DNA of 64,000 nt from Haliotis rubra (lineage: Eukaryota). The stretch is taken from NCBI RefSeq assembly GCF_003918875.1, contig NW_025764968.1:124001-188000 (forward strand), in the 5' to 3' direction. Below are positions 5,900-56,569 of the stretch, in pieces. The notes under the pieces were generated by a model that had not been told where the DNA came from, did not search any database, and worked only from the letters and a program-made list of their open reading frames with translations. The first letter of the stretch is position 1, and every line of letters starts with the position of its first letter. The translations under genes were made by a program, and so were the position numbers.

Positions 5900-8450
5900 A
5901 GTTAGTGTCACTTCATGGCGACCAAAAATCAATGGAGAGCTTTGTGATTTTGCTCCGCATTGAAACTCACCATGGTGATATAAGGAGTGGGCTTTTGCTA
6001 CATATTTGCATATCAACAAAGAGATAAGCAAACCAAGTATTTGATTTTCACCATGAATGTTGATATAAGTCTCTGGAGAGCTAGAATTGGCTGTTTTTGT
6101 CCTCACAGCCGACGACCACGTTGGTTTTACCCCAGTATACGGATGCCCGGTGGGATGCGTGTAGGATGTTGCCTGTTGTTGTTGATAATGACTTTACTCA
6201 TTGTATCTGGAGACGTGGAATCAAACCCAGGACCTCCTAAAACACCACATTCAGTCTCAGATGTCATCGTTGAATGACAAGTTCGACAAGTTTCGTAACG
6301 ACATCAGCGAAAAATGACATACATATCACATTCTGGATCTAGTGTTGTTGACTATTTTATTCTTTCTTCAAATATATTTGATAATATTGTCGATAGGAAA
6401 GTTTGGCAACGCACTGAGTCATACCACCTTCCATTGGTGTGCTGTTTTAAGAATATTATCCCATCAGTAAGTAATAATGAGATTCCGAATTCACAAAAAA
6501 TTGAACCATATTCAAGGATAAGTTACCGGCTTCCTCGGGATTGTCAAATTCCATATCAAAGTTATCTCCGCAGTAAATATGTCATAGATATGTTTAACAC
6601 ATTTACTTTATTACTGGAGGAAAACATCAACACTGTTGTAAGACAGAAAATATTTTCTGTTGAACAAATTCAGAAAATTTAAATGTGATTTAAACTTACA
6701 ATTGTATGGGGATGCCAAAAATGAATATAAATAATGTTGTGAAAAGAAAAAGCGTTCTTATAATACCAAAATATGTGATGATATAAAGAGGTCTGCTGAA
6801 CATGGAGATTGTAAGAGTTTTTGGAAGACATTAAAGAAAGTTATACGTGGAAATGTTCCAAGTTATTCGATGTCTCCTGATATTTGGTACGATTATTTCA
6901 ATAATTTGTTAAATCCGAAAGTTGAAAATGTTGATGTAAACAATTTTGATTCTTTTGTTTCCCAGTATATTAATTCACATTCTTGTGAAGATTGTAATGA
7001 TTTGTCTTTCACGGATGATCTTTTGTCAGGTGAAATAACAGATAGAGAAATAGTAGATGCTCTGAAAAATTAAAATGTGGTAAATCTGCAGGTGAGGATG
7101 GAGTACCCCCTGAAGTTTTCAAGATGTCGGGAAATTTCATTGTACGTTATTTGAAACTTCTTTTTAATCGTATCTTAAATATTGGCGATTTTCCAGAATC
7201 ATGGAATATAAGGTATGATTTTGGGTAAACGTTCTGACCCCAACAATTATAGAGGTATTTCCATTCTGAATGTTACAGGTAAATTGTTCACTATTGTTAT
7301 AGAAAAGCATCTTAGAATTTGCTTAGATGTAAATGATCTTATGTCAGAGTATCAAGCTGGTTTCCGCCAAAATTACTCAACAGTTGATAATCTATTCATT
7401 TTGCAAGCATTGTGTTCAAAATATTTATGTAAGCCAAAAGGCAGATTTTATTGTGCTTTTATCGATTTTAAGAAAGCTTTTGATTACCTTGATAGAAAAA
7501 AATTGTTGTATGTACTGCTTACTAAAGGCTGTCATGGAAAATTGTATAAGGTCATTAGAAATATGTATTCTTCTGTAAAGACTTTGTCTTAAACCTTCAT
7601 CTGGTAGAACTGAAGGGTTTTCCACTTCTAGTGGTGTGAGACAGGGTTGCATATTAAGCCCAGCTTTATTTATCTTTTTCAATAATGAACTTGTAACAGA
7701 GTATATAATGAGTGTAGTTATGGTGTATTTGTGACACAGGATATTGTTGACTTAATGTTACTTCTTTTTTGCTGATGATGTTGTCATGTTTTCATATACT
7801 GTTAATGGCCTGCAGAAACAATTAAATGTACTGTCTTTCTTTTGCAAGAAATGGGGTTTAGAAGTCAACTTACAAAAAACAAATGTCATTGTATTCAGAA
7901 ATGGAGGAAAAATTGCTAAACATGAACACATATGACAATGTTCCTTTAGAAATTAAGACATATTATAAGTATTTAGGATTAGTTATATCTTCTAGACTAG
8001 CATGGTCAGTATCTTGTAAGCAATTAGAACGTCAAGCATCTAAAGCTGTTATTTATATATATTTTTAACAAAACTTGTAACTGTTCCATTTTCTACAGCA
8101 TGTTCTATTTTTCATGGTAAAATTGCACCGATTTTGTTATATGGTGCAGAGATATGGGGCACTAAATATAATGAGGCAATACAAAAAGTCCAATCATTTT
8201 ATTTTAAACGCTTTTTTATGGGTTGGGAAGTTTGCTTCAAATAAGGCCATTTTAGGCGACCCAGGGTGTTATCCTCTTTTCATTCTCAGCCAAGTTAGAG
8301 TGGTTAAATACTGGTGTAAATTACTAAAGATGGAACTACAACGATATCCTTATCAATGCTATAATTTATTAAAAACTCTTGATGATAATGGTAAGACCAG
8401 TTGTAATTGGGTTTCAAATGTTAGATCTTAGCTTTTTACTTGTAATCTTA
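5900..8450 (+). mobile_element. Decayed APE-type non-LTR retrotransposon (LINE; CR1/L2-group-like) with N-terminal 2A peptide
   Basis: Fragmented ORFs: 2A GDVESNPGP; APE C-terminus (GSSVVDYF, ESYHLPL); RT motifs GKSAGEDG, NYRGISIL, QAGFR, FIDFKKAFD, GVRQGCILSP, FADD, YKYLG; many stops and frameshifts. Ends are approximate. Confidence 0.93.
6209..6235 (+). other. 2A/StopGo ribosome-skipping motif GDVESNPG-P
   Basis: GGA GAC GTG GAA TCA AAC CCA GGA CCT matches D(V/I)ExNPGP and follows a hydrophobic helix (LLLLIMTLLIVS). Confidence 0.9.
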
Positions 8451-11889: not shown

Positions 11890-14800
11890 TTATTATTAAC
11901 AAAAACACATCCTCATAAAACTGTTTTGCAGCACTGTAGCTATTCTACTGCTTACAAATATAGAAAAATATTTAAGAGATATATTTGTTTCGAAACACAG
12001 TTGGAGGCAGATGTAATGTCTCAGCCAAGCCATTTCTTTGGTAGCAGTGTTTCAAGGCAACTCACTCACTCACTCTGCCCAATGTAGGGATTATAAGGTA
12101 GCCTATATATAGCCTGGGTTCATACATGGCACTCTGGTTCAAGTGTTCGCTTGACATGCTGAAGACCTAGGTTCAGTTCACGATATGGCACAGTGGTTAA
12201 ACTGTTTGCTCATCAGAATACTTGGGTTCTACTCCCCATATGGTACAATGTATAAAGAAAGTAATCCATTCTCAATTTCTCTGCATATTGTACCACATTA
12301 ATTCCTTAGTCCGACATTTACCGCCTGATAAATGTGTTGTTTACATGCAGTGTGCACTATGACGTGATGTTTTGTATATATGTACATTCTAATCAAGGAC
12401 TAACCTCAAGCCTGTGCCAGTCACTGAGGAATGATTTTTTCCATGAATTTTTCCATGAATAAGACAATGTTTTTACTTTAGATCTTTGTAATCTCTACTA
12501 AAAGCTCAGACACTTCATGCAGTTTATTTTATAACTTTGGTCTTACCCTGTCTGGATGGTTTATAGATCTGACAACATTAAAATTGAAAGTCCAGTATTC
12601 GAAGGAATATAATGTCTCAATGGCAATAAGGATTGCTTTGAAAGGAAAACACCCACCAGGTATTTTGACATGAAGTTACATTTCTCCTTTTTTTGTTTCT
12701 TATATTAGATACAGTTATACTTTTTCATGTAAAAAAGAAGGTCGAGAGAAACCCTTCAGAGAGCCATGGTATTGTTTTTCCATGTTTAAACCACATATAA
12801 TTAAATATTAGATTTTCATTCTCAAAGTTTATGAAAGTGACATGGAAGAAAAAGTGTTGAAGTAATTTGTTTAAAATTTAAAAACAACAACATTTTTCTC
12901 AGCATGAATAGATGTAATTCAGATGAAATATACATTTTCTGAATTATGATGATTATTTCATCAAATCAACATGGAAACATTTCTAGCAATTTTCTTCATT
13001 TTCAGGGAGAAATGCAATGATATGAGGAAATAGGTTTCAAGGTGTTTTGGGCAGGAATGGTAAAAAAAAAAGTTTTAAAAAATGCCCCTTACCTTGTTGT
13101 GGCCTTGGAAGTGAACCCATGCAGTTCACTGATGCACACCTATAGGGTTGCCACCTGATCACTACGCCCCTCACTGATGTTTGCTGGATGAGCAGCTGTG
13201 GGATGAAATCAGTAGATAGCAGCCTCTTTCATTCATATCAAGTAGCGTACTACTGTAGGAAGCAGAGGGACCATCTTGAAATTCATTTCTCTTTATAGAT
13301 GAATGCCCTATGACAGTTTAATAGTGTAGGAGTTGTGTTTTACATGAATAAATGTTTGTTGGCAGAAAACTTGTCATATGCAATGATAAAATTGTGGATA
13401 TCGTGATGTTAAGTTTTATAACCTAGCAAAACAAATTGCAGATGTTAAAAAGAACTTATTTCTTAAAAATATGTTGTTTATGTAGAGACGAAATCATATA
13501 ATTTTGTAGAGAGAACATATTTTTAATTTCAAAATAATGACTACGGCGTTATTTTACTTAGTGATCATACTAATTTGATTTTCTGTGTTTGTGGAAAATT
13601 ACTTATAGAAATTTGTAAAAGTGTAATATGAATTCTCTCATAAGTGAAAACTTATCATATAATATGTGTGTGTAATAACTTTTTTATTTATTGCCCATTG
13701 CTTCTTAAGGATTTGTATCTCTCCTTTAGAAACATCATAGAGACGTGATTCACTATTGATATTTAAAACAGTAAACTCAATAGAAGAAATTTGAGCTACT
13801 TCTTAGTTTTGTTCATGCAAATATAAAACAGATGGTGTTGATGGTTATGATGTTAATCTTTAGAATATATGTATTTTTCCTTTAATCAAAACTTTAAGTT
13901 TAGCACTTTTCATAAAAATAGATAGTCCCCTTTGATGTTTAAAATTCTTAAACCATGGATATATATTTGAAAATGATCATTTAACTGTTTATATCACCCC
14001 TATTAAATCACGAAGGCTTTTGATTGGTTGGAAATCGATACATGGATCGACACATGCATGTTTAACCTTGTTGATAGCTGCAGCTGTAATTAGTATATCA
14101 GGATTTATTGGAGGAAATAATTCTCTTAACTCTGTAAGTTATTACTATATTTCTCATTGATTAGATTAGTCTGATCAAGTATTGACTTCAAATGTCCAGA
14201 TTTATTGATTTAGGTTTAGTCGGCATACCCTACTCAACATATTTATTATTTGATCCAGGATTTTTCAAGAAGAATTTTGTATTGACTAATAAATGTATTG
14301 TGTCGGGAATTATGATTTGTCAGGGGGGAAATATATTGTATAATTTTAGGTGATAAAATTATGAGTAGAGTAGACTGCTTGATGCGACACTAGTGTTTGT
14401 GAAATGTACAGGGTTTTTTTAGTTCAGAGATTGTTATTTGTCAGTGAACTTGATCTATCATTGCAACAAGCACGCAGAGTAGTATGATGTACTCTATATG
14501 TCAGCATATGTATCAGCCATGTAAGTTTCTTGACACAAATATCACTTAATGACAAATATTTATGTTTAATCCCCTTTCAAAATATTCTTTCTTCCTGTCC
14601 CACATGCATTCCTAAGTGTTTTGACAAATTTGAATGAATTTTAATTACTAATGTAAAACTGTCTCTTATCTTCAATCTGTAAACATTAAAAGTTATGTTA
14701 TTTGAACGTTTATCATGGCTGGCTATTTTTGAGAATTTTAACGTAAGATTTTCTGTTTTGGAAAAGTAGTGACGTGAAAAGGGTTGTAATCAAGACTAGT

Positions 14801-18785: not shown

Positions 18786-19277
18786 CAGAGGCCCAGATAA
18801 GCTGCGTATCCGGGTAAAATACGCAAATAAAATTTCCAATTACGCATTGAAAAATAACTGTTGCGTACCAATTACGCATTTAAAATGTTAGATACGCAAA
18901 AAGTTTTAAAAAAATGCGTACGGAATATATTTATAAAAATCACTTGCGTAATGAAAAAGACATCGATTGCTATCAAGTTGTACTGTTAGTATAGGACAAG
19001 TGTTGTACTGTCAGTATAGGATGAGTGATTTTTTATGAAATCATTTCCATTATGTTTAAGTTGGTGTTGATTAGGTATGACATAAGGCAGAACATACCTG
19101 CTTAGCAAACTTACTCAATGACATAATACTTAGTTGAGTAAAATGACTGAAATACGCACATATTTGAAAGCAGTGGGTAACGGAAAATGAAATACCCACT
19201 CAACATTCATAATACCCACTAAAAAAAAATACAGTGGGTACAGTACCCACATGAGCTAAATCTTATCTGGAGCTCTG
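18786..19277. mobile_element. hAT-like MITE with 5-bp TSD
   Basis: Imperfect TIRs CAGAGGGCCCAGATAAG / CTTATCTGGAGCTCTG; TSD CATAA. Confidence 0.8.
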
Positions 19278-19431
19278 CATAAAATATGACAGGTATGTCA
19301 GTGTGTCACTTGTTACATGTTGAAAATGTGTGTTATTGAGTCTGACTATATCCATAATGTTTGCAACTGTCTCTTGTAATGGAAGGTTGTAGGATACAAC
19401 TGCCTAATGCATTCCCCCATTCCTGTTCCAG

Positions 19432-19542
19432 CACTTCCCAAGTCTACAGTATGTGGATATACGATACAACAATCTGAAATCATTTCCACATGAATTCGTA
19501 GAGTGTACTGCACTTATCTCTCTCGATCTCAGTCACAACCAG
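19432..19542 (+). CDS. LRRK2: LRRK2 exon W6, LRR (HFPSLQYVDIRYNNL...LISLDLSHNQ)
   Basis: gttccag| and CAG|gtgagc; 111 nt; phase 0-0; not in the ORF track. Confidence 0.93.
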
Positions 19543-22500
19543 GTGAGCTCCATTACATTCCTTGTCACACTCTCAGTCACTACCAGGTGAGCTCCATTAC
19601 ATTTCTTGTCACACTCAATCACAACCAGGTGAGCTCCATTACATTCCTTGCCCCACTCAGTCACTACCAGGTGAGCTCTATTACATTCCTTGTCACTCTC
19701 AGTAACAACCAGGTGAGCTCCATTACATTCCTTGTCACTCTCAGTCACAACCAGGTGAGCTCCATTACATTCCTTGTCACTCTCAATCACAACCAGGTGA
19801 GCTCCATTACATTCCTTGTCACTCTCAATCACAACCAGGTGAGCTCCATTACATTCCTTGTCACACTCAGTCACAACCAGGTGAGCTCCATTACATTCCT
19901 TGTCACTCTCAATCACAACCAGGTGAGCTCCATTACATTCCTTGCCCCACTCAGTCACTACCAGGTGAGCTCTATTACATTCCTTGTCACTCTCAATCAC
20001 AACCAGGTGAGCTCCATTACATTCCTTGTTACTCTCAGTCACAACCAGGTGAGCTCCATTCCATTCCTTGTCACACTCAATCACAACCAGGTGAGCTCCA
20101 TTACATTCCTTGTCACACTCCGTCACTACCAGGTGAGCTCCATTACATTCCTTGTCACTCTCAATCACAACCAGGTGAGCTCCATTACATTCCTTGCCCC
20201 ACTCAGTCACTACCAGGTGAGCTCTATTACATTCCTTGTCACTCTCAGTATCAACAAGGTGAGCTCATTTACATTCCTTGTCACTCTCAGTCACAACCAG
20301 GTGAGCTCCATTACATTCCTTGTCACTCTCAATAACAACCAGGTGAGCACCATTACATTCCTTGTCACACTCAGTCACTACCAGGTGAGCTCTATTACAT
20401 TCCTTGTCACTCTCAGTCACAACCAGGTGAGCTCATTCCATTCCTTGTCACTCTCAATCACAACCAGGTGAGCTCCATTACATTCCATGTCACACTCTGT
20501 CACTACCAGGTGAGCTCCATTACATTCCATGTCACTCTCAATCACAACCAGGTGAGCTCCATTACATTCCTTGCCCCACCCAGTCACTACCAGGTGAGCT
20601 CTATTCCATTCCTTGTCACTCTCAGTCACAACCAGGTGAGCTCATTTACATTCCTTATCACTCTCAGTCACAACCAGGTGAACTCCAGTTCGTTCCTTGT
20701 CACACTCAGTCACAACCAGGTGAGCTCTATTACATTCCTTGTCGGACACAGTCACAACCAGGTGAGCTCCATTACATTCCTTGTCACACTCAGTCACAAC
20801 CAGGTGAGCTCCATTCCATTCCTTGTCACACTCTGTCACTACCAGGTGAGCTCTATTCCATTCCTTGTCACACTCTGTCACAACCAGGTGAACTCCAGTT
20901 CATTCCTTGTCACACTCAATCACAACCAGGTGAGCTCTATTACATTCCTTGTCACACTCTGTCACTACCAAGTGAGCTCCATTCCATTCCTTGTCACACT
21001 CAGTCACAACCAGGTGAGCTCCATTACATTCCTTGTCACACTCTCAGTCACTACCAGGTGAGCTCCATTACATTCCTTGTCACTCTCAGTAACAACCAGG
21101 TGAGCTCCATTACATTCCTTGCCCCACTCAGTCACTACCAGGTGAGCTCTATTACATTCCTTGTCACTCTCAGTCACAACCAGATGAGCTCCATTACATT
21201 CCTTGTCACTCTCAGTCACAACCAGGTGAGCTCCATTCCATTCCTTGTCACTCTCAATCACAACCAGGTGAGCTCCATTACATTCCTTGTCACACTCAGT
21301 TACTACCAGGTGAGCTCCAGTTCATTCCTTGCCCCACTCAGTCACTACCAGGTGAGCTCTATTACATTCCTTGTCACTCTCAGTCACAACCAGGTGAGCT
21401 CATTTACATTCCTTATCACTCTCAGTCACAACCAGGTGAACTCCAGTTCGTTCCTTGTCACACTCAGTCACAACCAGGTGAGCTCTATTACATTCCTTGT
21501 CGGACACAGTCACAACCAGGTGAGCTCCATTACATTCCTTGTCACACTCAGTCACAACCAGGTGAGCTCCATTCCATTCCTTGTCACACTCTGTCACTAC
21601 CAGGTGAGCTCTATTCCATTCCTTGTCACACCCTGTCACAACCAGGTGAACTCCAGTTCATTCCTTGTCACACTCAATCACAACCAGGTGAGCTGTATTA
21701 CATTCCTTGTCACACTCTGTCACTACCAGGTGAGCTCCATTACATTCCTTGTCACACTCAGTCACAACCAGGTGAGCTCCATTACATTCCTTGTCACACT
21801 CTCAGTCACTACCAGGTGAGCTCCATTACATTCCTTGTCACTCTCAATCACAACCAGGTGAGCTCCATTACATTCCTTGCCCCACTCAGTCACAACCAGG
21901 TGAGCTCTTTAACATTCCTTGTCACACTCTGTCACAACCAGGTGAGCTCCAGTTCATTCCTTGTCGGACACAGTCACAACCAGGTGAGCTCCATTCCATT
22001 CCTTGTCACACTCTGTCACTACCAGGTGAGCTCTATTCCATTCCTTGTCACACTCAGTCACTACCAGGTGAGCTCCATTACATTCTTTGTCACACTCAGT
22101 CACAAACAGGTGAGCTCTATTACATTCCTTGTCGGACACAGTCACAACCAGGTGAGCTCTTTTACATTCCTTGTCACACTCTGTCACGACCAGGTGAGCT
22201 CCATTCCATTCCTTGTCACACTCTGTCACTACTAGGTGAGCTCTATTCCATTCCTTGTCACACCCTGTCACAACCAGGTGAGCTCCAGTTCATTCCTTGT
22301 CACACTCAATCACAACCAGGTGAGCTCCATTACATTCCTTGTCGGACACAGTAAGAACCAGGTGAGCTCTTTTCATTCCTTGTCATACTCAGTCACAACC
22401 AGGTGAGCTCCATTACATTCCTTGTCACACTCTGTCACTACCAGGTGAGCTCTATTCCATTCCTTGTCACTCTCAATCACAACCAGGTGAGCCCTTTTAC

Positions 22501-22970
22501 ATTCCTTGTCACACTCTGTCACAACCAGGTGAGCTCCAGTTCATTCCTTGTCACACTCTGTCACAACCAGGTGAGCTCCATTCCATTCCTTGTCACTGTC
22601 AGTCACAACCAGGTGAGCTCCATTCCATTCCATTCCTTGTCACTCTCAATCACAACCAGGTGAGCTCCATTCCATTCCTTGTCACACTCAGTCACAACCA
22701 GGTGAGCTCCATTCCATTCCTTGTCACACTCAGTCAAAACCAGGTGAGCTCTATTACATTCCTTGTCGGTCACAGTTCACAACCAGGTGAGCTCCAGTAC
22801 ATTCCTTGTCACTCTCAGTCACAACAAGGTGAGCTCCAGTACATTCCTTGTCACACTCAGTCACAACCAGGTGAGCTCCATTCCATTCCTTGTCACTCTC
22901 AATCACAACCAGGTGAGCGCTTTTACATTCCTTGTCACACTCAGTCACAACCAGGTGAGTTCCATTCCAT
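19528..22970 (+). repeat. 42-bp minisatellite, about 80 copies, built from the W6 exon end plus 5' splice site
   Basis: Unit CTCAGTCACAACCAG|GTGAGCTCCATTACATTCCTTGTCACA; the first copy overlaps the real exon end. Confidence 0.97.
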
Positions 22971-23102
22971 TTTCTAGAACTGTCATTGTACATTGTCTTT
23001 GGCCAGGCACTGACCACCTGGTCCTGCCTGTAACAGGGACTTATATGATTTATATATAATTTCATATTTGGATTCATATTTTTTATCTTGACACTGATTC
23101 AG

Positions 23103-23239
23103 ATCACCAATCTGAGCAACAAGGACCTGTCTGGAATCTACAGCATCAGGGAACTGAATCTTTCTTCTAATCAGATTGAAAACTTTCCAGACAAAATTGA
23201 CAAAGCCATGCCACATTTGGAGAAGCTGATTCTTTACAA
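23103..23239 (+). CDS. LRRK2: LRRK2 exon W7, LRR (ITNLSNKDLSGIYSIRELNLSSNQI...LEKLILY)
   Basis: gattcag| and |gtaagt; phase 0-2. Confidence 0.93.
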
Positions 23240-24446
23240 GTAAGTGATTCATTGCTTGCTTCACATGATTCATTATTTTGCAATTGGAGGATTTTCATCA
23301 AATTAATTTAATATGTCATAGAATGTTTTGCTATAATTTCTGCAATCAAAACTCCCAGAAAGAGTCCTGCCCAAAGTGTTCGTTATAACAACCAGAAAGC
23401 TTGTTCTTTCTCAAATGTGTTCATAGAATCGGAAGTACTTTGTAAGAAACTATTCTAAAGTGTTTCCCCCATTTAAACTCCATGTTATTTTTTTAGTCAA
23501 CTGTAATGAAAAATACATGGATTGATTGCTGAAATAGGCATGAAACCCAACTCACTCACTCACTCACTCAGTACTGTCAGTACAATAGTACTGTCGGCTT
23601 CCTGGTGAACCTTACCTTAAGTGATATTTGGCCTGGGGTTAATATGGGGTTTATCAAAGCTTGGAAGAGGCAAGCTCAGTTCAGTTATCAGAGATACTCT
23701 GTGCCAGGATACTCTGATTGAAAGCTTGATTGTAAACCTGTTCTGATATTAGTTCCACCAGCAAAATAGAAATTGTGGTCTTTCCTTCCATGTCAGGCAA
23801 TGGGGTAGCCTCCTGGGTAAAGTGTTAACTCATCACGCTGAAGGCTGGGGTCGATTCTTACATGGATTGAAGGCATACCTGGTGTCCCCCACAGTGATAA
23901 AGCAAAAAAAACCTTGTACCTTGTAGAGTTCCTCTTACATCACTTGCTTGATAACGGTGTTAGTACCTACACCGAAACGTCGCATGGATTGCAATAAGGA
24001 TGTTGACTATCCATAGAACTTCACCTATACAACTTCTAAAAGAAGGGATCCTCTTAGTTGTGCCAGGATCTGATTGAAAGCTTGAGTGTAAACCCTCTTG
24101 TTAATTTGTTCTGATCCTAGTTCTACTAGGACAATAGCCATTTCACATCACTTTAGCCTTTCCTTCAATGTCGGGTGATGGTGCTTAAAGTGTTCACTCG
24201 TGCTTAAAGTGTTCACTCGTGCTTAAAGTGTTCACTCATGCTTCCCTATCTTTGTGAAGCCCATTCCTGGCATCCACCACTGTGATATTGCTCAAGTATT
24301 TCGCTCACTCACCACATCCACATTGACTGACTCCAAGGTCTGTCGTTAGATACCCAGCCCTGTCACACTAGATGATGTTTGCTGGTTATTACCCTGTGTG
24401 GCTCTTGGCAGGATAAAACACAGGCTGGTTGTCATTGAGGCATATA

Positions 24447-25018: not shown

Positions 25019-25294
25019 TACTGTGTCTAAGTGGGGATTTTCAGTGAGCTAGGACTATTATATCTCCATCAGTTGGGACTGGTACAAGCAGCCACACCTC
25101 AATTCATGTTGTAGCATGTTGTAACTATGCTAATCTTGAACATAAAACCACACTGACCTCAACTCACCTTTCTGCCGTGAATCACTCTGTAGCTCATTGA
25201 CACAAAGGCTTTAAGACTGATCAACAAGAGTATAATGTGTATGCTTTGTCGTGTAACTGTTCTAGGGAGGTGTTAATTCTATGTTTTCTCCTAG

Positions 25295-25446
25295 GAACAA
25301 GATATCTAGTCTTCCCAAGTCCACCATTAACCTGCCACAGCTCCGACGTCTTGACCTGTCCAGGAACTTCATCACACACCTACATGGCAACTTCCTGTCT
25401 GCCTGTAACAAGCTGGAAACACTCGAGATGGTCAGCAATGGTCTAG
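25295..25446 (+). CDS. LRRK2: LRRK2 exon W8, LRR (NKISSLPK...LRRLDLSRNFI...MVSNGL)
   Basis: ctcctag| and |gtgagc; phase 2-1. Confidence 0.93.
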
Positions 25447-25698
25447 GTGAGCATTGTCCTGCAGGTGTCCTGAATGGTCAGTAACTGTCTAGGTATTTAT
25501 AGTTCTGTTGTCCTGTTCTGAGTGCAGGTCCAGAAGAACAAATAATAACACTCTCACCTGAGTGTCCTCAACAAGAAACAAGAAGAAACATAGATATGTT
25601 CAAGAATATTTTATGTTGTAAGCCTCATTTCTCAGAACACAAACTCCCAGTCCACTCTCTTTTCTGTCAGATCTGTCAGATGATGTCTGTATTTCCAG

Positions 25699-25822
25699 AA
25701 CAACTCCCTGGCGAGGACATGGCCAAACATTTTCCCCGACTCAGCACTTTGAAGTTAAAGGGGAACCTGCTGAAGGAGAAAGAACCATTCTACATTCCAA
25801 AGTTCATCTTGGAACTTCAGAG
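25699..25822 (+). CDS. LRRK2: LRRK2 exon W9, LRR (EQLPGEDM...LSTLKLKGNLL...IPKFILELQ)
   Basis: tttccag| and |gtcggt; phase 1-2. Confidence 0.9.
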
Positions 25823-26004
25823 GTCGGTACACAGCAGGATGTTTGCATCTGGAGATTCATGTATAATGTACCATTGTTCCTATTTTTAGATTGTATCATT
25901 GCAAAATTTGATAAGTAAAAGGTCTTAGAGGCTCATAACTGAATGTTTCTACCATGATAATTTTTGCTGTTGTATATTATTTGACTCTCTTCTGAAGTAG
26001 GGAC

Positions 26005-26450
26005 ATTGGGTTGCCCACTGGTTAAAGCATTTGCTCATCACACCGAAGGCCCTGGTTCAATTCCCTACATGGGTAGAATGTGTGAAGCCCATTTCTGGTG
26101 TCCCCCGCCGTGATATTGCTGGAATATTGCTAACAGCAGCATAAAACACAACTCGCTTACTCTTCTTCAGTATATGCCATGTTGTGTGTTGTCCATACTG
26201 AGATATTGTCTCCAGTCACTATTGGGGCAGTGAGGTAGCCTCGTGGTTAAAGTGTTCTCTCATTGTGTTGTAGACCTGGGTTTGATTCCCCACATGGGTA
26301 CAGTGTGTGAAGCCCATTTCTTTTGTCCCTCACTGTGATATTGCTGGAATATTGCTAAAAGCTGTGTAAAACTAACCTCACTCTGTCTTTTGTCCCTCAC
26401 CGTGATATTGCTGGAATATTGCTAAAACTAAACTCCCTCACTCACTCCAG
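26005..26450 (+). mobile_element. Two tandem tRNA-derived SINE family A copies
   Basis: GGTTAAAG..GGTTCAATTCCC / GGTTTGATTCCCC heads and shared body. Confidence 0.85.
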
Positions 26451-26580
26451 TCACTATTTCAGAGTATGTAACATAAGCAATGTGTTGGTATTGTGCTGGT
26501 TACTAGGCACTGTGGAAGCTTGTTATGCACAGGTAGACACAGTCAGTGGGTAGCGCTAGTAACACATCTTTCTGTTGCAG

Positions 26581-26692
26581 CCTCAGGTTTGTGGATTTGT
26601 CCAAGAACGGGCTGATGGGATTCCCTCCTCCAGTGTTATGGAAGTCCCAGATCCTGAAGGAAATCTTAGTGTCTGAAAACAACATCTCAAGA
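26581..26692 (+). CDS. LRRK2: LRRK2 exon W10, LRR (LRFVDLSKNGL...WKSQILKEILVSENNISR)
   Basis: gttgcag| and |gtaagt; phase 2-0; resembles human WKSLNLRELLFSHNQI. Confidence 0.94.
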
Positions 26693-27004
26693 GTAAGTTC
26701 AGAATGGCCTACTCATTAGTACTGACTCAACTCGTTTTGCTTTTATTTCATTTCATTTATTTCATTTTGACAGTCATCTGAGGCGATGCAACTCACTGAC
26801 AGTTGTGTCCCCAGAATCCTGTGGGTTTGTATTGTTTAGACTGTGAGAATCATGGCTTTGTCCACAAAGCTATCTTTGACGTATCACCTTCATAAGTCAG
26901 TGCTGAAGTAAAACCTTCACTACTTCACCAAAACAAAACTGTCTGAAGCACTTCAAAAGCACTGCCAACAATGAACAGAGCCAAAAGATATCTCATCCCA
27001 ACCA

Positions 27005-27253
27005 GTTCCGTGGATGTCCGGGTTAGAATAAGCCTTCAGTAACCCATGTTTGTCGTAAGCGGCGACTAACAGGATCTGGTGGTCAGGCTCGCTGGCTTGG
27101 TTGACACATGTCATCGGTTCCCAATTGCTCTGATCGATGCTCATGATGTTGATCACTGGATTGTTTGGTCCAAACTCGATTATTTACAGACCACCGCCAT
27201 ATTGCTGGATTATTGCTGAGTGTGGCGTTAAACTAAACTCACTCACTCACTCA
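27005..27253 (+). mobile_element. SINE-like repeat family B
   Basis: GTCGTAAGCGGCGACTAA core and (TCAC)n tail. Confidence 0.85.
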
Positions 27254-27557
27254 CCCCATCCAGCTACAATGAACTGACTAAGCCACCACTAATTCGTTGC
27301 TTCAGCTATGTGTATTTGGTTCCACCTCATGTACACTTGGCTTCCTCCAGTCACTGTTACTGCAATACTGACCAATATCCATAGTTGTTCTTGTTAATCC
27401 CTTTCATACATGCTTAAACTTTATGGGGTGGTGGGGCAGCCTGATCAAGCCGGCATGATCTGATATAACTGAAATACACTTCAAAGTCATTTTATATCCA
27501 ATTCACAAACACCTTAAAAGTGATATTGATAATGGAACTGTTATGCCACTGTTCCAG

Positions 27558-28158: not shown

Positions 28159-28199
<41 letters not shown>

Positions 28200-28248
28200 C
28201 ACAATATGAAGCATGAATCAAGATTATTGTTGAGTGGATTTCTTGTAG

Positions 28249-28359
28249 ATTCCAAAGGATATTGGTCATCTGGTATCGCTACAATCACTGGACTTGAACC
28301 ATAACAAGTCCTTGACTTCTCTACCAGATGAACTTGGCAGGTGCTCTCGCATGTGGGAG
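28249..28359 (+). CDS. LRRK2: LRRK2 exon W12, LRR (IPKDIGHL...LPDELGRCSRMWE), includes the S1292-equivalent Ser
   Basis: cttgtag| and |gtaagg; phase 0-0. Confidence 0.95.
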
Positions 28360-28498
28360 GTAAGGTTGTTTTCAATGACATCCTTTTCTGGGCAGGTGTT
28401 GATCAGATTTTGTTTAAAAAGTTTGTTACTGATTCTGTTGAAAGATAAAAACAAGATGTAAACATGTGGCCTCCTGATATGTCTTCACATGTATTCAG

Positions 28499-28597
28499 AT
28501 GCCTCTTGATGGCTTGAACTTGAGTGACCTTGATGACAGTCTCGTTAAAGGAAGAGTGAAGGATCTGATAATCTATCTCCACAATCGACTGAAAAAG
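28499..28597 (+). CDS. LRRK2: LRRK2 exon W13 (MPLDGLNL...KDLIIYLHNRLKK)
   Basis: tattcag| and |gtaaga; phase 0-0. Confidence 0.95.
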
Positions 28598-29030
28598 GTA
28601 AGAGGTTCTCAGCTGAGGTGGACGAATGGTCTAACTTTTCTAACAAGTAGGGACCTCTCATATTCAGAACTAGTTTAAGTGTAATTTTAAGAGCCCTTCA
28701 AGTAGACAGACAGTCATATCTGAAGTCTTGTTTCGACATAAATTGTTAGGAGATGGACGAGTAATGGTGATAGTTATCTCAAGATTTTTTTCCAATGACG
28801 TGATTTCCAAACTAAAACGTGAAAGTTAATCCCAGATCAATAAGTACAAAACTAAATTGGGAAATCTAAGTGTGGTTTTATGTGTTCTATACCAGCAATG
28901 AATAATGAATAATTAGTTGTTTACTAATAGTACATTGTGACCGGAAGCCTTGTGACATTATTGACCAATCGCAATGTCATTGACCAAAAGCACCATGGTC
29001 CTTCTTGTGCCGTTACTTGATTAAACAAAC

Positions 29031-35712: not shown

Positions 35713-36180
35713 GTGACAGGGGGGATTACAGGGATGCTTCCAGGGAGTATATATATGTCCTGCCAAAGAAACATGGGGACAGTGGGGTAGCCTAGTGGTT
35801 ATCATGTTCGCTTGTCACACTGAAGACCCTGGTTCGATTCCAGAATTGGGCACTATGTGTGAATCACAATTTCCGGTATCCAATGTTGTGATGTTGCTGA
35901 AATATTGCTATGAGCGATGTTCAGCTGTACTTGATTACCTACCCAGCTAGGATGCCTGAATATTTATCTCAGCAGACTTTCTTTGGAAGTGGGTAGGTCA
36001 GGGACCAAGCATTTCATATTCCATCTATATACCATGTTTGTAACATCTTGCATGTACTTTTCTTATTATACTCACCTAATCCAGAAGATTGTTCATCCAG
36101 ACTGTTTCAGTGGTTACCATCCTGATAACAGGCTTTCAGACTATTTTAGAAAGTAGACTAATCTCCCCTTTCTGCTGCAG

Positions 36181-36342
36181 GCTGTGAGGTTCCTGCATGA
36201 GGGCGGGGTCCTGCTCCACTACAACGAGACAGCGCTGCAGCTGAGAGACTTCTACTTCATCAACCCTGGCTGGTTGTGTCGGATGATGGCACAAGTGGTC
36301 ACTGTCAGGATGATCAATCCATTCATTGACCCTTTGACTGGG
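36181..36342 (+). CDS. LRRK2: LRRK2 exon W21, COR-A (AVRFLHEGGVLLHY...PGWLCRMMAQVVTV...LTG)
   Basis: gctgcag| and |gtaatt; phase 0-0. Confidence 0.96.
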
Positions 36343-36489
36343 GTAATTGAATACTACATGAAATTATATCTTGTTGGTTTTGTTTTTTTATTTTGATGCA
36401 GGTAGATTGTCTTTGTGCATATTATAAACCATGACTGTGTTGGGTTTGAAAGTATTTGCCCCTTGAATTGTAATTGGTAAGTTGGTTGC

Positions 36490-36732: not shown

Positions 36733-37188
36733 TACTGAAAAGCTGTACAAACATCAAATTGATACCACCACTGGCTGGTCAAGTGGTCAAAGGTAATCAC
36801 GATCCTTATCTTTGTCAGTAGCGTTGGGGATCCCAGGGAAAGTCTGGATCAGGTTCTGTGGGCTCTGGGTGAGATCCTATGCCCTGTGCATCATGGATTC
36901 GTAACCTGGATTAACCCATATTGTTTCTAGTTTTGTCTCGGCCTTGCAGAGATCATACTGAACCATGGAGTCTTGAGTCATGGACTGCAGGACCAAGTCT
37001 GTTGATGATCTATAAGATGTGAGTTGGTATGAAGAGTACTGTGGATCGTTGGTAATCAATGTGATAACTGAGAGTCCTATTGGATGATGTTGGAGGAGCT
37101 GTGAGGATGTAGGAGTTTAGGATATTAATCTGACCTAGTATCCTCTTAAGATGTTTCCTTGTAATGTAAATTTCTTTGTTTCTTGCAG

Positions 37189-39175: not shown

Positions 39176-39247
39176 ACCATGATGCAGCTTAGAAGGGAGC
39201 CTCAGATGCAGTACTGGAGACAAGGAATCCTCGTCAAGTGGTCAAAG
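39176..39247 (+). CDS. LRRK2: LRRK2 exon W25, COR-B (TMMQLRREPQMQYWRQGILVKWSK)
   Basis: cttcaag| acceptor (an in-frame CAG lies 12 nt downstream) and |gtaacc; YWRQGI motif; phase 0-0. Confidence 0.9.
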
Positions 39248-40109
39248 GTAACCCTGATCCTAAGATCGGTCAGTAGTGTTAGGGGTCAGTCCCAGTGTTG
39301 AAAGGAGACAAGGCAGAGTGCTGGAGACAGGGATCCCAAGGGAATCTGGTTAGGTGCTTTAGGGTCAGGGTCAGATCCCATGCTGGTGATGAAAGGAGAC
39401 AAGGCAGCCTCAGTGCTGGAGACAGGGATCCTCGTCAAGTGGTCAAAGGTAACTCTGATCCTTATATTGGGCTGTAGTGTTGGGGACCCCAGGGGAATCT
39501 GGGTTAGGTTCTGTGGGCTCAGGGTGAGATCCCATGCTGGTGATGAAAGGTTACCTACTGGATGACTTACTTGATTATGTGCCCTTACATCCCAGTGACA
39601 TGGATTAATGTTCACAATAATGATTATTTTTCCTGGTCCAGACTTCACTATTTACTGGTCACAGTCATAAATCTGGAATATTGCTCAGTGCAATGTTAAA
39701 AACATACATAAACATTAGTAATGGGTTATTTGGTATGTGGTACTTTATATTCAGAAGCATACAAGATTGATGATTGTTCTTGATGAGATTCTGGGTCAGG
39801 ATAGGTCCCCAGCTCTCCAGTAATGCTGAGGAGCTGCGACATTGCAAGTCCTTTACAGCTTGGATTTGTGCCCATGATGTCAACCACTGGATTTCTTGGT
39901 CCTGATTTCTCACTCAAGTGTAAAATAACATTACATTGAGAAAAACAGCTCACCACTCATCAGCTCGCCATTCATCAAAAATAAATCCACTCACCAGCTC
40001 AACCACTCACTCACTCACTCACTCACTCAGTATTTTACAAATCTGTCTGTACAGAGCTGGATATCATTGGCATGCCAGAGACCACATGTTCTTTTCATCA
40101 ACTCTTCCA

Positions 40110-40925: not shown

Positions 40926-41131
40926 AGCCATCAACTCAGACACAATCCATCAGTTCACTCACTGTTTAGCAATTCACCCATGCCCACGCCCACACACACA
41001 CTCACACGCCTGTGCCTGCATACACCGACACCAGCACCCGCACATGCACACACCCATGTCAATGATCTCACCCACCCATCAATGATCTCACCCACCCGTC
41101 AATGATCTCACCCACTCGCTGACTGTTTCAG

Positions 41132-50780: not shown

Positions 50781-50829
50781 GTGGGTCCTGGCATAGAACG
50801 TGGAGTAGATGGGTCGGATGGGGTCATGG

Positions 50830-53745
50830 TTGAAGAGTTTATTGATGGTTGAAAAGTGGATGGTGGGTTTAGTTGATGGAGAGGTGAGTTGATGGAAGGT
50901 GAGTTGATTGAGGGTTGAGTTGATTGTTGTTGAGTGGATGGCGATGTGTTTAGTTGATTGAGAGGTGAGTTGATGGAAGGTGAGTGGATTGAGGGTTGAG
51001 TTGATGGTTGGTGAGTGGATGATGTGTTTAGTTGATTGAGAGGTGAGTTGATGGAAGGTGAGTGGATTGAGGGTTGAGTTGATGGTTGGTGAGTGGATGG
51101 CGATGGGTTTAGTTGATGGAGAGGTGAGTTGATGGAAGGTGAGTGGATTGAGGGTTGAGTTGATGGTTGGTGAGTGGATGATGTGTTTAGTTGATTGAGA
51201 GGTGAGTTGATGGAAGGTGAGTGGATTGAGGGTTGAGAAGATGGTGAGTGGATTGAGAATTTAGTTGATGGAGAGATGAGTTGATGGAAGGGGAGTTGAT
51301 TGAGTTGAGTTGATGGTTGTTGAGAGGATGGCGATGGGTTTAGTTGATTGAGAGGTGAGTTGATGGAAGGTGAGTTGATTGAGGGTTGAGTTGATGGTTG
51401 TTGAGTGGATGATGATGGGTTTAGTTGATTGAGAGGTGAGTTGATGGAAGGTGAGTGGATTGAGGGTTGAGTTGATGGTTGTGAGTGGTGGATGTTTAGT
51501 TGATTGAGTTTGAGTTGATGGAGGTGAGGTTGAGTTGATGAGTGGATGGTGTTTAGTGGATTGAGGGTTTGAAGTTGATGGATTGAGGTTGAGTTGGATG
51601 GATGATGGGTTTAGTTGATTGAGAGGTGAGTTGATGGAAGGTGAGTGGATTGAGGGTTGAGTTGATGGTTGGTTGAGTGGATGATGTGTTTTAGTTGATT
51701 GAGAGGTGAGTTGATGGAAGGTGAGTGGATTGAGGGTTGAGTTGATGGTTGTTGATGAGTGGATGATGATGGGTTTAGTTGATTGAGAGGTGAGCTGATG
51801 GAAGGTGTGAGTGGATTGAGGGTTGAGTTGATGGTTGGTGAGTGGATGATGATGGGTTGAGTTGATGGTTGAGAGGTGAGTTGATGGAAGGTGAGTGGAT
51901 TGAGGGTTGAGTTGATGGTTGGTGAGTGGATGATGATGGGTTTAGTTGATGGAGAGGTGGAGTTGATGGAAGGTGAGTGGATTGAGGGTTGAGTTGATGG
52001 TTGGTGAGTGGATGATGTGTTTAGTTGATTGAGAGGTGAGTTGATGGAAGGTGAGTGGATTGAGGGTTGAGTTGATGGTTGGTGAGTGGATGATGATGGG
52101 TTTAGTTGATGAGAGGTGAGTTGATGGAAGGTGAGTGGATTGAGGGTTGAGTTGATGGTTGTTGAGTGGATGGATGATGGGTTTAGTTGATTGAGAGGTG
52201 AGTTGATGGAAGGTGAGTGGATTGAGGGTTGAGTTGATGGTTGTTGAGTGGATGATGATGTGTTTAGTTGATTGAGAGGTGAGTTGATGGAAGGTGAGTG
52301 GATTGAGGGTTGAGTTGATGGTTGGTGAGTGGATGATGATGGGTTTAGTTGATGAGAGAGGTGAGTTGATGGAAGGTGAGTGGATTGAGGGTGAGTTGAT
52401 GGTTGATGTTGGTGAGTGGTGGATTGATGGTTGTTTAGTTGATGGAGAGGTGAGTTGATGGAAGGTGAGTGGATTGAGGAGTTGATTGAGTTGAATTGAT
52501 GGTTGTTGAGTGGATGATGATGTGTTTAGTTGATTGAGAGGTGAGTTGATGGAAGATGAGTGGATAGAGGGTTGAGTTGATGGTTTGGTTGATGAGTGAA
52601 TGGATTGAGAGGTTGAGTTGATTTAGTGAGTGGATTGAGTTGATTGGAGGTGAGTTGATGGAAGATGAGTGGATTGAGGGTTGAGTTGATTGGTTGGTGA
52701 GTTGATGGAAGGTGAGTGGATTGAGGGTTGAGTTGATGGTTGGTGAGTGGATTGAGGGTTTAGTTGATTGAGAGGTGAGTTGATGGAAGGTGAGTGGATT
52801 GAGGGTTGAGTTGATGGTTGGTGAGGATTGAGGGTTTAGTTGATTGAGAGGTGAGTTGATGGAAAGTTGATTGAGGGTTGGTGAGTTGGTGAGTGAGGTT
52901 TAGTTGGAAGGTGAGTGGATTGAGGGTTGAGTTGATGGTTGGTGAGTGGATTGAGGGTTTAGTTAATTGAGAGGTGAGTTGATGTAAGGTGAGTGGATTG
53001 AGAGGTGAGTTGATGGAAGGGGAGTTGATTGAGGGTTGAGTTGATGGTTGGTGAGTGGATTTAGGGTTTAGTTGATTGAGAGGTGAGTTGATGGAAGGTG
53101 AGTGGATTGATGATGGGTTTAGTGGATTGAGGGGAGTGGATTGAGGGGGTTGAGTTGATGGTTGGTGAGTGGATTGAGGATTTAGTTGATGGTGAGAGGT
53201 GAGTTGATGGAAGGTGAATGGATTGAGAGGTGAGTTGATGGAAGGGAGTTGATTGATGGATTGAGTTGATGAGGATTGGTAAGTGAATTTAGGGTTTAGT
53301 TGATTGAATGGATTGAGAGGTGAGTTGATGGAAGGGGAGTTGATTGAGGGTTGAGTTGATGAGTGGATGAGAGGTTGAGTTAGTTGATGGAGAGGTTGAG
53401 TTGATGAGTGGTGATGAGTTGTTGAGGTGAGAGTTCGTTGATGGAAGGAGTGGATTGATGGTGGGTTGAGTTGATGGTTGGTGAGTGAATTTAGGGTTTA
53501 GTTGATGGAGAGGTGAGTTGATGGAAGGTGAGTGGATTGAGGGTTGAATTGATGGTTGTTGAGTGGATGATGATGGGTTTAGTTGATTGAGAGGTGAGTT
53601 GATGGAAGATGAGTGGATTGAGGGTTGAGTTGATGGTTGGTGAGTGGATTGAGGGTTGAGAAGATGGTGAGTGGATTTATGTTTTAGCTGATGGAGCTTG
53701 AGTTGATGGCAGGTTGAGTTGATGGAGGGTTGAGTGGATGTGGGA
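50830..53745. repeat. G/T-rich tandem array, 78-81-bp unit made of ~13-bp subrepeats
   Basis: Unit GAGAGGTGAGTTGATGGAAGGTGAGTGGATTGAGGGTTGAGTTGATGGTTGGTGAGTGGATGATGATGGGTTTAGTTGATT; almost no C. Confidence 0.96.
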
Positions 53746-53852
53746 TTCAGCTGTGGATTCAGTTGGTGGGTTGAACTAGTGAAGATGATGTATGGTTTTG
53801 TAGCTGGGATAACCTTGATTTCAGTACTAACATTTGTTGGCATGTGTTACAG

Positions 53853-56234: not shown

Positions 56235-56510
56235 GGTCGACCTGTAGATGAGGGGTAGTAGAGATCGACCTTCAGATGAGGGGTAATAGAGGTCGACCTT
56301 CAGATGAGGGGTAATAGAGGTCAACCTTCAGATGAGGGGTAATAGAGGTCGACTGTCAGATGAGGGGTAATAGAGGTCGACCTTCAGATGAGGGGTAATA
56401 GAGGTCGACCTTCAGATGAGGGGTAATAGAGGTCAACCTTCAGATGAGGGGTAGTACAGGTCGACCTTCAGATGTGGGGTAATAGAGGTCGACCTTCAGA
56501 TGAGGGATAG
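56235..56510. repeat. 28-bp minisatellite (about 10 copies)
   Basis: Unit GAGGTCGACCTTCAGATGAGGGGTAATA, starting just after the W42 donor. Confidence 0.95.
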
Positions 56511-56569
56511 TAGTTCTTACAGTGTTTCCTCGGCACATTGAAGACCTGGGTTTGTTTCTACTCATCGGT

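What the first reader, a model, noticed from the sequence alone, without database searches (positions are those of the whole stretch)
19528..22970. An exon-intron junction amplified about 80 times: a 3.4-kb array of the LRR exon's own splice donor
Seen: the 42-bp unit is the last 15 nt of exon W6 (CTCAGTCACAACCAG, encoding LSHNQ), its donor GTGAGC and the first intron bases. Nearly the whole intron is therefore about 80 copies of the authentic CAG|GTGAG site, and the last copy (22954) is a perfect CAG|GTGAGT. The unit is 14 codons and reads as LRR-like VSSITFLVTLSHNQ. Each CAG|GT also follows a pyrimidine-rich stretch, so it resembles a 3'ss/5'ss ratchet point; splicing the true donor to any unit's CAG would regenerate an identical junction. 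Established: tandem duplication of AG|GT is a proposed intron-gain route, and AG|GT ratchet points underlie recursive splicing. Inference: the array may be removed recursively, act as a U1 decoy, or make copy number a dial on productive LRRK2 splicing.
Basis: partly seen in the sequence, partly recalled or inferred. Interest (0 to 1): 0.85.

Follow-up and report, generated by a model that had tools for sequence, protein, structure and literature searches.

The report
Splice-donor minisatellite in abalone LRRK2-like intron
An intron of the blacklip abalone LRRK2-like gene is 96% filled by about 82 tandem copies of its own exon end and splice donor; the array is real and extreme, but it belongs to a kind of junction-spanning minisatellite long known in human genes and is most likely spliced out whole from the first donor.

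Summary
TRF finds a 42-nt unit repeated 81.8 times at 19528-22971. The array starts 15 nt inside a 111-nt LRR exon (19432-19542). That makes 82 donor-like sites, of which 72 are exactly CAG|GTGAGC and the last is CAG|GTGAGT.

The window is Haliotis rubra (GCA_003918875.1). The gene is LRRK2-like (XP_046571062.1), and its NCBI model joins 19542 to 23103.

The intron sits at the same codon and phase in Physella (171 nt) and Patella (1621 nt). So an old, probably short, intron was inflated to 3560 nt; it was not created by the duplication.

All 81 downstream donors would give a premature stop. By a matrix built from the gene's own sites, the pseudo-donors are strong. The unit's CAG is a poor acceptor, which argues against ratchet points.

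The kind is already known: F7 IVS7, IFI6 (6-16), CBS, LMNB2 and PDGFA (Borensztajn 2006). In those genes the most upstream donor is used.

A random-seed null gives 1.03 junction-spanning arrays for this gene; 1 is observed.

No RNA evidence could be obtained. The recursive, decoy and dial ideas therefore remain untested.

The scan had already noted at least 24 similar arrays elsewhere in this genome.

Best reading: a near-neutral VNTR. It is a new member of a known kind.

The parts
19432..19542 (+). Exon W6 (exon 8 of NCBI model XP_046571062.1), 111 nt, phase 0, encoding HFPSLQ...LDLSHNQ. Its last 15 nt are the first 15 nt of the repeat unit.
   Evidence: Exact spliced mapping of P0002 onto the locus. 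The orthologous Physella exon is also 111 nt.
19528..22971 (+). 42-nt minisatellite, 81.8 copies, with 58 distinct unit variants.
19540..19548 (+). Authentic 5' splice site CAG|GTGAGC (cut after 19542). This is the most upstream of the 82 sites.
   Evidence: The gene model and the H. asinina protein both read LSHNQ-IT without a gap.
19543..19586 (+). First intronic unit, a 44-nt variant with 2 extra bases. It shifts the frame so that the TGA at 19588-19590 stops any read-through. The same 44-nt variant recurs at 21014 and 21772.
20636..20929 (+). Block of 7 units that recurs 18 units (758 nt) downstream at 21394-21687. This is a higher-order duplication inside the array.
   Evidence: identical unit labels at lag 18, with 8 identical pairs at that lag.
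21394..21687 (+). Second copy of the 7-unit block.
22952..22960 (+). Last pseudo-donor, CAG|GTGAGT. It scores 12.1 bits, above every real donor of the gene, and lies 148 nt upstream of the acceptor.
22972..23102 (+). Unique 131-nt tail of the intron, carrying the T-rich tract and the acceptor (ending ...gattcag). It is the presumed remnant of a short ancestral intron.
23103..23239 (+). Exon W7 (model exon 9), 137 nt, encoding ITNLSNKDL...LILYK.
   Evidence: The Patella orthologous exon is also 137 nt.

Best explanation
This is a near-neutral minisatellite (probably a VNTR). A 42-bp segment straddling the exon W6 / intron boundary was duplicated in tandem. Slippage and unequal exchange then expanded it to about 82 units, inflating an old intron that was probably about 160 nt long to 3560 nt. 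What is shown: the anatomy, the gene identity, the age of the intron, the strength of the pseudo-donors, and the unproductive outcome of using any of them. What is inferred: the spliceosome uses the first, exon-adjacent donor, because only that site completes definition of the 111-nt exon; the whole array is removed in one lariat; the 81 downstream sites stay silent or are used rarely; and any such transcripts carry a premature stop and would be degraded by NMD. No recursive splicing or selected decoy function is needed.
For: Anatomy. Array dynamics are typical of minisatellites. There are 58 unit variants, a 7-unit block is duplicated at lag 18, and the 44-nt 'first' unit recurs at unit indices 35 and 53, so it is not a junction-specific device. 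The unit occurs nowhere else in the window. The window is H. rubra contig QXJH01001068.1. The NCBI model joins 19542 to 23103, and H. asinina has the same gapless LSHNQ-IT junction. The intron lies at the same codon and phase in Physella (171 nt) and Patella (1621 nt). The 5277 nt of CDS in the window has no stop. About 12 stops would be expected if the gene had been dead for the time implied by about 11% pairwise divergence between units. The gene tolerates a second intron that holds 51 AGGTGAGT motifs. Under a random-seed null, 1.03 junction-spanning arrays are expected in this gene and 1 is observed. In Physella the figures are 9 observed against 5.64 expected (P 0.07), and in Patella 0 against 0.48. 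Singleton mutations hit the donor 9-mer about as often as expected (4 against about 6). RNA folding shows no structure that would mask the sites (z = +0.8). Precedent: in F7 IVS7, LMNB2 and PDGFA only the most upstream of the reiterated donors is used; in IFI6 and CBS the next two are used as well (PMC1557585).
Against: There is no RNA evidence. The only two runs found behave as genomic DNA: one contig runs unspliced through W6 and both flanks, and nothing was laid on W7. The gene model is an automatic prediction. The pseudo-donors are strong (10.3 bits, above 86% of the gene's real donors). The last one is the best donor in the gene and lies 148 nt from the acceptor, so it would form a normal short intron. 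Proximity or intron-definition rules would favour it (established knowledge from duplicated-5'ss experiments). The donor 9-mer is the second least variable 9-nt window of the unit (rank 2 of 42), which could hint at constraint. IFI6 and CBS show that the nearest pseudo-sites can leak. Copy number comes from a 30x Nanopore hybrid assembly (PMC6774278) and was not confirmed by any spanning read.
Confidence: 0.72

Rival explanations
1. Leaky decoys or expression dial. A measurable share of transcripts is spliced from pseudo-donors, either the next one or two (as in IFI6 and CBS) or the last, perfect one near the acceptor. These transcripts carry a premature stop and are degraded, so array length and unit variants set the productive output of the gene.
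For: All 81 sites lead to a stop. The sites are strong and the last is the strongest in the gene. There is no masking structure. IFI6 and CBS use two pseudo-sites, and CBS VNTR length has been linked to enzyme activity (titles cited in PMC1557585). Read contigs hold a 32-nt unit variant that is absent from the assembly, a hint of allelic variation.
Against: F7, LMNB2 and PDGFA show no use of pseudo-sites. The ORF is intact and the junction is conserved in congeners. Junction arrays occur at the neutral rate, which argues against a large fitness cost. No RNA data were available.
Confidence: 0.17
2. Recursive (ratchet) splicing. The intron is removed stepwise by splicing the exon to a unit's CAG, which regenerates CAG|GTGAGC for the next step.
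For: Every unit has AG|GT, and the regenerated junction would be identical to the original.
Against: The acceptor half is weak: median 3.2 bits against 8.0 for real sites, with 14% of random intronic AGs scoring as well. In 47 of 81 units another AG lies 3-15 nt upstream. The intron is 3.6 kb, whereas known recursive sites serve very long introns (established knowledge). The motif exists simply because the unit was copied from the exon-intron boundary.
Confidence: 0.03
3. Selected U1 snRNP platform. The roughly 81 U1-complementary sites recruit U1 to enhance definition of exon W6, suppress premature polyadenylation, or retain the pre-mRNA.
For: The donor 9-mer is among the least variable parts of the unit (minor-allele fraction 0.014 against a mean of 0.071). 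A second intron is also packed with GGTGAGT.
Against: Rank 2 of 42 windows is only marginal, and a second block (unit positions 29-37) is equally invariant. Singletons occur at about the neutral rate. Arrays of this type are as frequent as chance seeding predicts. No expression data were available.
Confidence: 0.04
4. Assembly artefact in copy number. The array exists, but its length and unit order are distorted by hybrid Nanopore and Illumina assembly and polishing.
For: The assembly used about 30x early Nanopore reads, Racon and Pilon polishing, and haplotig purging in a genome with 1.3-1.4% heterozygosity. No laid record spans the array, and one unit variant in the reads is not in the assembly.
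Against: Hundreds of short-read contigs match array variants at 95-100% with no indel differences. The 58 variants and the block structure are unlikely to be products of error.
Confidence: 0.04

Closest known systems
Human F7 intron 7 37-bp VNTR (Borensztajn et al. 2006, PLoS Genet, PMC1557585)
   Same: The first monomer of the minisatellite spans the exon-intron boundary, so the authentic donor is followed by identical pseudo-donors. The pseudo-sites are functional in themselves but silent, and the most upstream site wins.
   Different: F7 has 5-9 copies against about 82 here. Its unit holds 4 exon nt plus 33 intron nt, against 15 plus 27 here. It is a vertebrate gene, and its splicing was tested experimentally, which was not done here.
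Human IFI6 (6-16) intron 2 minisatellite (Turri et al. 1995, as cited in PMC1557585)
   Same: Many reiterated donors (the authentic one plus 25 pseudo-sites) arise from a junction-spanning repeat.
   Different: In IFI6 the two nearest pseudo-sites are used constitutively. Here any such use gives a premature stop. The paper itself could not be read.
Human LMNB2 and PDGFA intronic repeats, and the CBS IVS13 31-bp VNTR (as cited in PMC1557585)
   Same: [quoted passage not shown] The CBS VNTR sits at an exon/intron border.
   Different: These have 10-20 copies and units of 31-100 bp. In CBS, VNTR length is reported to be associated with enzyme activity, which is a precedent for the dial idea.
Recursive splice sites (ratchet points) of long Drosophila and vertebrate introns
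   Same: An AG|GT juxtaposition that regenerates a 5' splice site after the first step.
   Different: Here the acceptor half is weak, the intron is short, and the motif is explained by the origin of the unit. There are no RNA intermediates to examine.
Junction-spanning arrays in the Physella acuta LRRK2-like gene
   Same: The same gene family in another gastropod has donor-side and acceptor-side minisatellites built from exon edges. The annotated site is always the exon-adjacent copy.
   Different: These sit at different introns, and the orthologous intron in Physella is a plain 171 nt. The largest array there is 46 nt x 48, at an acceptor.

Membership tests
Minisatellite whose first monomer spans an exon-intron boundary (F7 / IFI6 / CBS / LMNB2 / PDGFA type) | Tandem array of units of about 10-100 bp | tested here: met
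   42 nt x 81.8 copies, 88% matches.
Minisatellite whose first monomer spans an exon-intron boundary (F7 / IFI6 / CBS / LMNB2 / PDGFA type) | The first unit contains the authentic exon end and its donor | tested here: met
   The array starts at 19528 and the exon ends at 19542 by exact mapping of XP_046571062.1. The boundary is conserved in Physella and Patella.
Minisatellite whose first monomer spans an exon-intron boundary (F7 / IFI6 / CBS / LMNB2 / PDGFA type) | Downstream pseudo-donors identical or nearly identical to the authentic site | tested here: met
   72 of 82 sites have the identical 9-mer CAGGTGAGC, and 81 of 82 keep GT.
Minisatellite whose first monomer spans an exon-intron boundary (F7 / IFI6 / CBS / LMNB2 / PDGFA type) | The most upstream donor is used and pseudo-sites are silent or nearly so | not testable with these tools
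   No RNA runs were available. The evidence is indirect only: the gene model, the congener proteins and the intact ORF.
Minisatellite whose first monomer spans an exon-intron boundary (F7 / IFI6 / CBS / LMNB2 / PDGFA type) | Copy number polymorphic among individuals (VNTR) | tested here: inconclusive
   Read contigs hold a 32-nt unit variant that is not in the assembly (joint 22003 to 22559). No spanning reads and no second individual were available.
Recursive splice site (ratchet point) | A strong 3' splice site (pyrimidine tract, AG) directly fused to a 5' splice site | tested here: not met
   The 5' half is strong (10.3 bits). The 3' half scores 3.2 bits, below 84% of real acceptors and at the 86th percentile of random intronic AGs. 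An upstream AG is present in 47 of 81 units.
Recursive splice site (ratchet point) | Lies in a very long intron | tested here: not met
   The intron is 3560 nt.
Recursive splice site (ratchet point) | Recursive intermediates or lariats present in RNA | not testable with these tools
   No RNA data.
Intron gain by tandem duplication of an AGGT-containing segment | The intron is absent at that position in relatives | tested here: not met
   An intron is present at the same codon and phase in Physella acuta and Patella caerulea.
LRRK2 orthologue group | LRR, Roc, COR, kinase and LRRK2-type beta-propeller architecture, closer to LRRK2 than to LRRK1 | tested here: met
   The COR exon scores 8e-14 to human LRRK2 and 9e-5 to LRRK1. 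Pfam domains Roc, COR-A, COR-B, Pkinase and Beta-prop_LRRK2 are found, and congeners also carry ARM_LRRK2 and ANK_LRRK2.

The most novel reading that the evidence does not exclude
Array length and unit composition act as a heritable dial on LRRK2-like output. A copy-number-dependent share of transcripts is captured by pseudo-donors (especially the last, perfect one, which lies 148 nt from the acceptor) and removed by NMD. More broadly, gastropod spliceosomes follow such a strict exon-adjacent-site rule that junction minisatellites are neutral and have become a main route of intron expansion.
Probability: 0.12. Interest if true: 0.7.

Novelty: new member of a known kind. Interest (0 to 1): 0.4.

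Why it matters
With about 81 strong pseudo-donors behind one authentic site, this is a much larger natural 5' splice-site competition than the human examples (4-25 pseudo-sites). It also lies in a lineage where splice-site choice has hardly been studied. If only the first donor is used, that extends the rule that the most upstream, exon-adjacent site wins to molluscs and to an extreme case. It also shows how an old intron, probably short originally, can grow more than 20-fold at no cost. If pseudo-donors leak, the array is a length-variable brake on an LRRK2 homologue. Public RNA-seq from the sequenced animal can settle the question. The gene is a mollusc homologue, so nothing here bears directly on human LRRK2 or Parkinson's disease.

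Tried and rejected
- **RNA evidence.** The look-up of sequencing runs (kind rna) returned only two runs of unknown kind from one sample. Read laying showed contigs like genomic DNA: one runs unspliced through W6, nothing was laid on W7, and there were no splice joints.
- **Transcript fragments.** Protein searches with the joined W6+W7 peptide and with the W6 read-through ORF found nothing.
- **Orthologous intron in other abalones.** The H. asinina and H. cracherodii genes span 172 kb and 131 kb, so no DNA was served. I did not try to get round this limit.
- **Masking structure.** Five units fold no better than shuffled sequence (z = +0.8).
- **Genome-wide repeat family or transposon origin.** There are no copies outside the array in the window. 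The rest of the genome could not be searched.
- **First-unit insertion as a safety device.** I rejected the idea that the 2-nt insertion in the first unit is selected for that purpose, because the same 44-nt variant recurs twice deep in the array.
- **Junctions as preferred seeding sites.** I rejected this for this gene, because 1 junction-spanning array is observed against 1.03 expected.
- **PDB search with the LRR exons alone.** It gave only generic LRR hits, so the COR exon was used to identify the gene.
- **Turri 1995.** The paper is not held in the library.
Full report
**What is there.** Reading 19200-23400 and running TRF confirm a single array at 19528-22971: period 42, 81.8 copies, 88% matches, score 5177. 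I parsed it at every GTGA(G/A) anchor. This gives 82 donor-like sites, counting the authentic one at 19543.
- 72 of the sites are exactly CAGGTGAGC.
- The last site (G of GT at 22955) is CAGGTGAGT.
- One site has lost its GT (CAGATGAGC at 21184).
- 74 units are 42 nt long. The others are 44 nt (3 units), 41 nt (2), 43 nt (1) and 47 nt (1).

A 29-nt core of the unit matches 74 times with up to 3 mismatches. All matches lie inside the array on the + strand, and none is expected by chance. The array occupies 3429 of the 3560 intron bases. The remaining 131 nt (22972-23102) carry the T-rich tract and the acceptor.

**Gene and organism.** The exon translates to HFPSLQ...LDLSHNQ and the next exon to ITNLSNKDL.... 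The LRR exons alone give only generic LRR hits in the PDB. The COR exon (36169-36345) matches human LRRK2 at 8e-14 and LRRK1 at 9e-5.

A search of the representative library found P0002 at 97% identity. This is XP_046571062.1, 'leucine-rich repeat serine/threonine-protein kinase 2-like [Haliotis rubra]'. Its locus, L001, is contig QXJH01001068.1 of GCA_003918875.1. The window is the same DNA, offset by 3777 bases. L001 is therefore not independent evidence.

I mapped P0002 exactly onto the locus and recovered 46 exons. W7 is exon 9 (23103-23239). The model joins 19542 directly to 23103. The H. asinina orthologue (P0151) reads LDLSHNQITHLSNKDL without a gap and is 92% identical over 161 residues.

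**Direction and age.** I fetched the orthologous genes of Physella acuta (L002) and Patella caerulea (L003) and mapped their proteins exactly.
- In Physella the homologous exon is also 111 nt. It ends in phase 0 after ...LSLNK and is followed by a 171-nt intron.
- In Patella the exon ends after ...LTKNQ and is followed by a 1621-nt intron and then a 137-nt exon.

The intron is therefore old, and the exon end is ancestral. The array was copied from the junction; it did not create the junction. Taking the repeats away leaves about 27 + 131 nt. This suggests, by inference, an ancestral intron of roughly 160 nt that has been inflated about 22-fold.

**Array dynamics.** There are 58 distinct units among the 82. 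A block of seven units (20636-20929) recurs 18 units downstream (21394-21687). The 44-nt variant that forms the first intronic unit recurs at 21014 and 21772. This is ordinary minisatellite behaviour: slippage, unequal exchange and block duplication. It also argues against the reading of note s1-333174, that the 2-nt insertion in the first repeat is a purpose-built safety device.

The fact stated in that note is nevertheless correct. Read-through from W6 stops at the TGA at 19588. The second donor gives a +44 frameshift. All 81 downstream donors lead to a premature stop.

**Strength of the sites.** I built log-odds matrices from the gene's own 43 donors and 44 acceptors, scoring the real sites by leave-one-out.
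- *Donors.* The array donors score 10.3 bits, higher than 86% of the real donors. The last one scores 12.1 bits, higher than all of them.
- *Acceptors.* The unit's CAG, read as an acceptor, scores a median of 3.2 bits, against 8.0 for real acceptors. That is below 84% of the real sites, and 14% of random intronic AGs do as well. In 47 of 81 units another AG lies 3-15 nt upstream.

The 5' half of the proposed ratchet point is real. The 3' half is not convincing. Five units fold no better than shuffled sequence (z = +0.8), so structure does not hide the donors.

**Constraint.** Across the units, the donor 9-mer has a mean minor-allele fraction of 0.014, against 0.071 for the whole unit. That ranks 2nd lowest of 42 circular windows. 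Positions 29-37 of the unit are equally invariant. Singleton changes strike the donor 9-mer about as often as expected (4 against about 6). I take this as no clear evidence of selection either for or against the decoy donors.

**RNA.** Laid on 19250-23450, they behave as genomic DNA.
- A 364-nt contig runs unspliced from the upstream intron through W6 into the array.
- Array pieces match at 95-100% with no indel differences.
- Nothing was laid on W7, and there are no splice joints.

One contig carries a 32-nt unit variant (shown as a joint from 22003 to 22559) that is absent from the assembly. This hints at allelic or unassembled variation. Searches for transcript-derived protein fragments found nothing. 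Which donor is used was therefore not observed. It is inferred from the gene model, from the congener proteins, and from the intact ORF. The 5277 nt of CDS in the window contain no stop. About 12 stops would be expected at 5.5% neutral divergence and about 2 at 1%. The mean distance between units is about 4.8 differences in 42 nt, which suggests the array is not brand new. That dating is rough, because minisatellites may mutate faster than ordinary sequence.

**What is known.** Borensztajn et al. [quoted passage not shown]
- *F7 IVS7:* 37 bp, 5-9 copies.
- *IFI6 (6-16) intron 2:* the authentic donor plus 25 pseudo-sites, of which the two nearest are also used.
- *CBS IVS13:* 15-20 copies, with two pseudo-sites used.
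- *LMNB2:* 10-15 copies of 100 bp. [quoted passage not shown]
- *PDGFA intron 4.*

[quoted passage not shown] Only a pseudo-site made to match the consensus perfectly shifts the choice, and then only partly. The abalone array meets every structural criterion of this class. It differs mainly in scale (about 82 copies) and in lineage.

**How common, and is it more than chance?** The scan's first readers had already noted at least 24 junction-derived arrays elsewhere in this genome. These notes are unchecked. In this window, TRF finds 11 arrays inside the gene, and one of them spans a junction. I used a null model in which a seed of one unit length lands at random in the array-collapsed gene, and seeds that fall wholly inside an exon are discarded. 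The results:

| Gene | Observed | Expected | P |
|---|---|---|---|
| H. rubra (window) | 1 | 1.03 | 0.67 |
| Physella acuta (L002) | 9 of 19 arrays | 5.64 | 0.07 |
| Patella caerulea (L003) | 0 | 0.48 | 1.0 |

In these three orthologous genes, junction-spanning arrays are about as frequent as random small duplications would make them. This argues against both a special seeding mechanism and strong selection against reiterated splice sites. In Physella the arrays lie on both the donor and the acceptor side, and the annotated site is always the exon-adjacent copy. That fits an exon-definition explanation for why the first donor wins, but this step is my inference.

**Verdict.** The functional proposals (recursive removal, U1 decoy, copy-number dial) are untested, and the recursive one is disfavoured by the sequence.

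The best explanation is a near-neutral, junction-seeded minisatellite that is removed as part of one intron from the first donor (confidence about 0.72). The main rival is leaky use of pseudo-donors followed by NMD (about 0.17). It cannot be dismissed, because the last donor is the strongest in the gene and lies only 148 nt from the acceptor.

The copy number rests on a 30x Nanopore hybrid assembly (PMC6774278) and needs a spanning read. I class the finding as a new member of a known kind. It is of moderate interest as an extreme natural test of 5' splice-site choice and as a clear case of intron inflation.

Noticed in passing
window 50781-53852 (intron 40; TRF array 50842-53740): A second intron of the same gene is filled by a 15/31/81-nt G/T-rich array holding 51 AGGTGAGT and 72 GGTGAGT motifs, against 1 AGGTGAGT in the other 57 kb of the window. 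The array is not derived from exon 40's own end (AAAAG|GTGGGT). The gene therefore carries well over 100 strong decoy donors in two introns.
   Followed up: partly
window 39230-39296, 39431-39497, 36775-36841: The end of exon 27 plus its donor (…GGTCAAAG|GTAACC) and the start of the intron are copied 201 nt downstream (82% to the reference copy at 36775-36841) and into intron 23 about 2.5 kb upstream (the exon-27 copy is 70% identical to it). This looks like a two-copy stage of junction duplication and confirms note s1-333175.
   Followed up: partly
L002 (Physella acuta LRRK2-like), e.g. 25247-27435, 19611-20361, 12489-12910, 28178-28839: The 29-kb gene holds 19 tandem arrays, and 9 of them overlap an exon edge by at least 5 nt. 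These include 48 copies of a 46-nt unit made of an acceptor plus the first 23 exon bases, and a 142-nt x 5.3 donor-side array. The annotated splice site is always the exon-adjacent copy.
   Followed up: partly
window 19250-19281: Read-contig depth jumps to about 46,000 (X1) and 14,700 (X2) over 19250-19390, and many contigs diverge at 19280-19282. This marks the end of a very high-copy interspersed repeat just upstream of exon W6.
   Followed up: no
window 56235-56513 and 41059-41115: A 28-nt x 10 array starts 22 nt after exon 44's donor. A 20-nt x 2.8 array ends 16 nt before exon 28's acceptor. Both lie close to junctions but do not span them.
   Followed up: no
window -1776 to 600 (model exons 1-3); P0002 versus P0151/P0152: The H. 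rubra model has 1823 aa and lacks the ARM and ANK N-terminal half that is present in the 2587-aa H. asinina and H. cracherodii proteins. Its first exons are probably an artefactual start for a truncated model.
   Followed up: no
window 7000-8450 (+ strand ORFs): ORF fragments in a large intron resemble a reverse transcriptase (for example …FFADDVVMF…), consistent with a decayed non-LTR retrotransposon.
   Followed up: no
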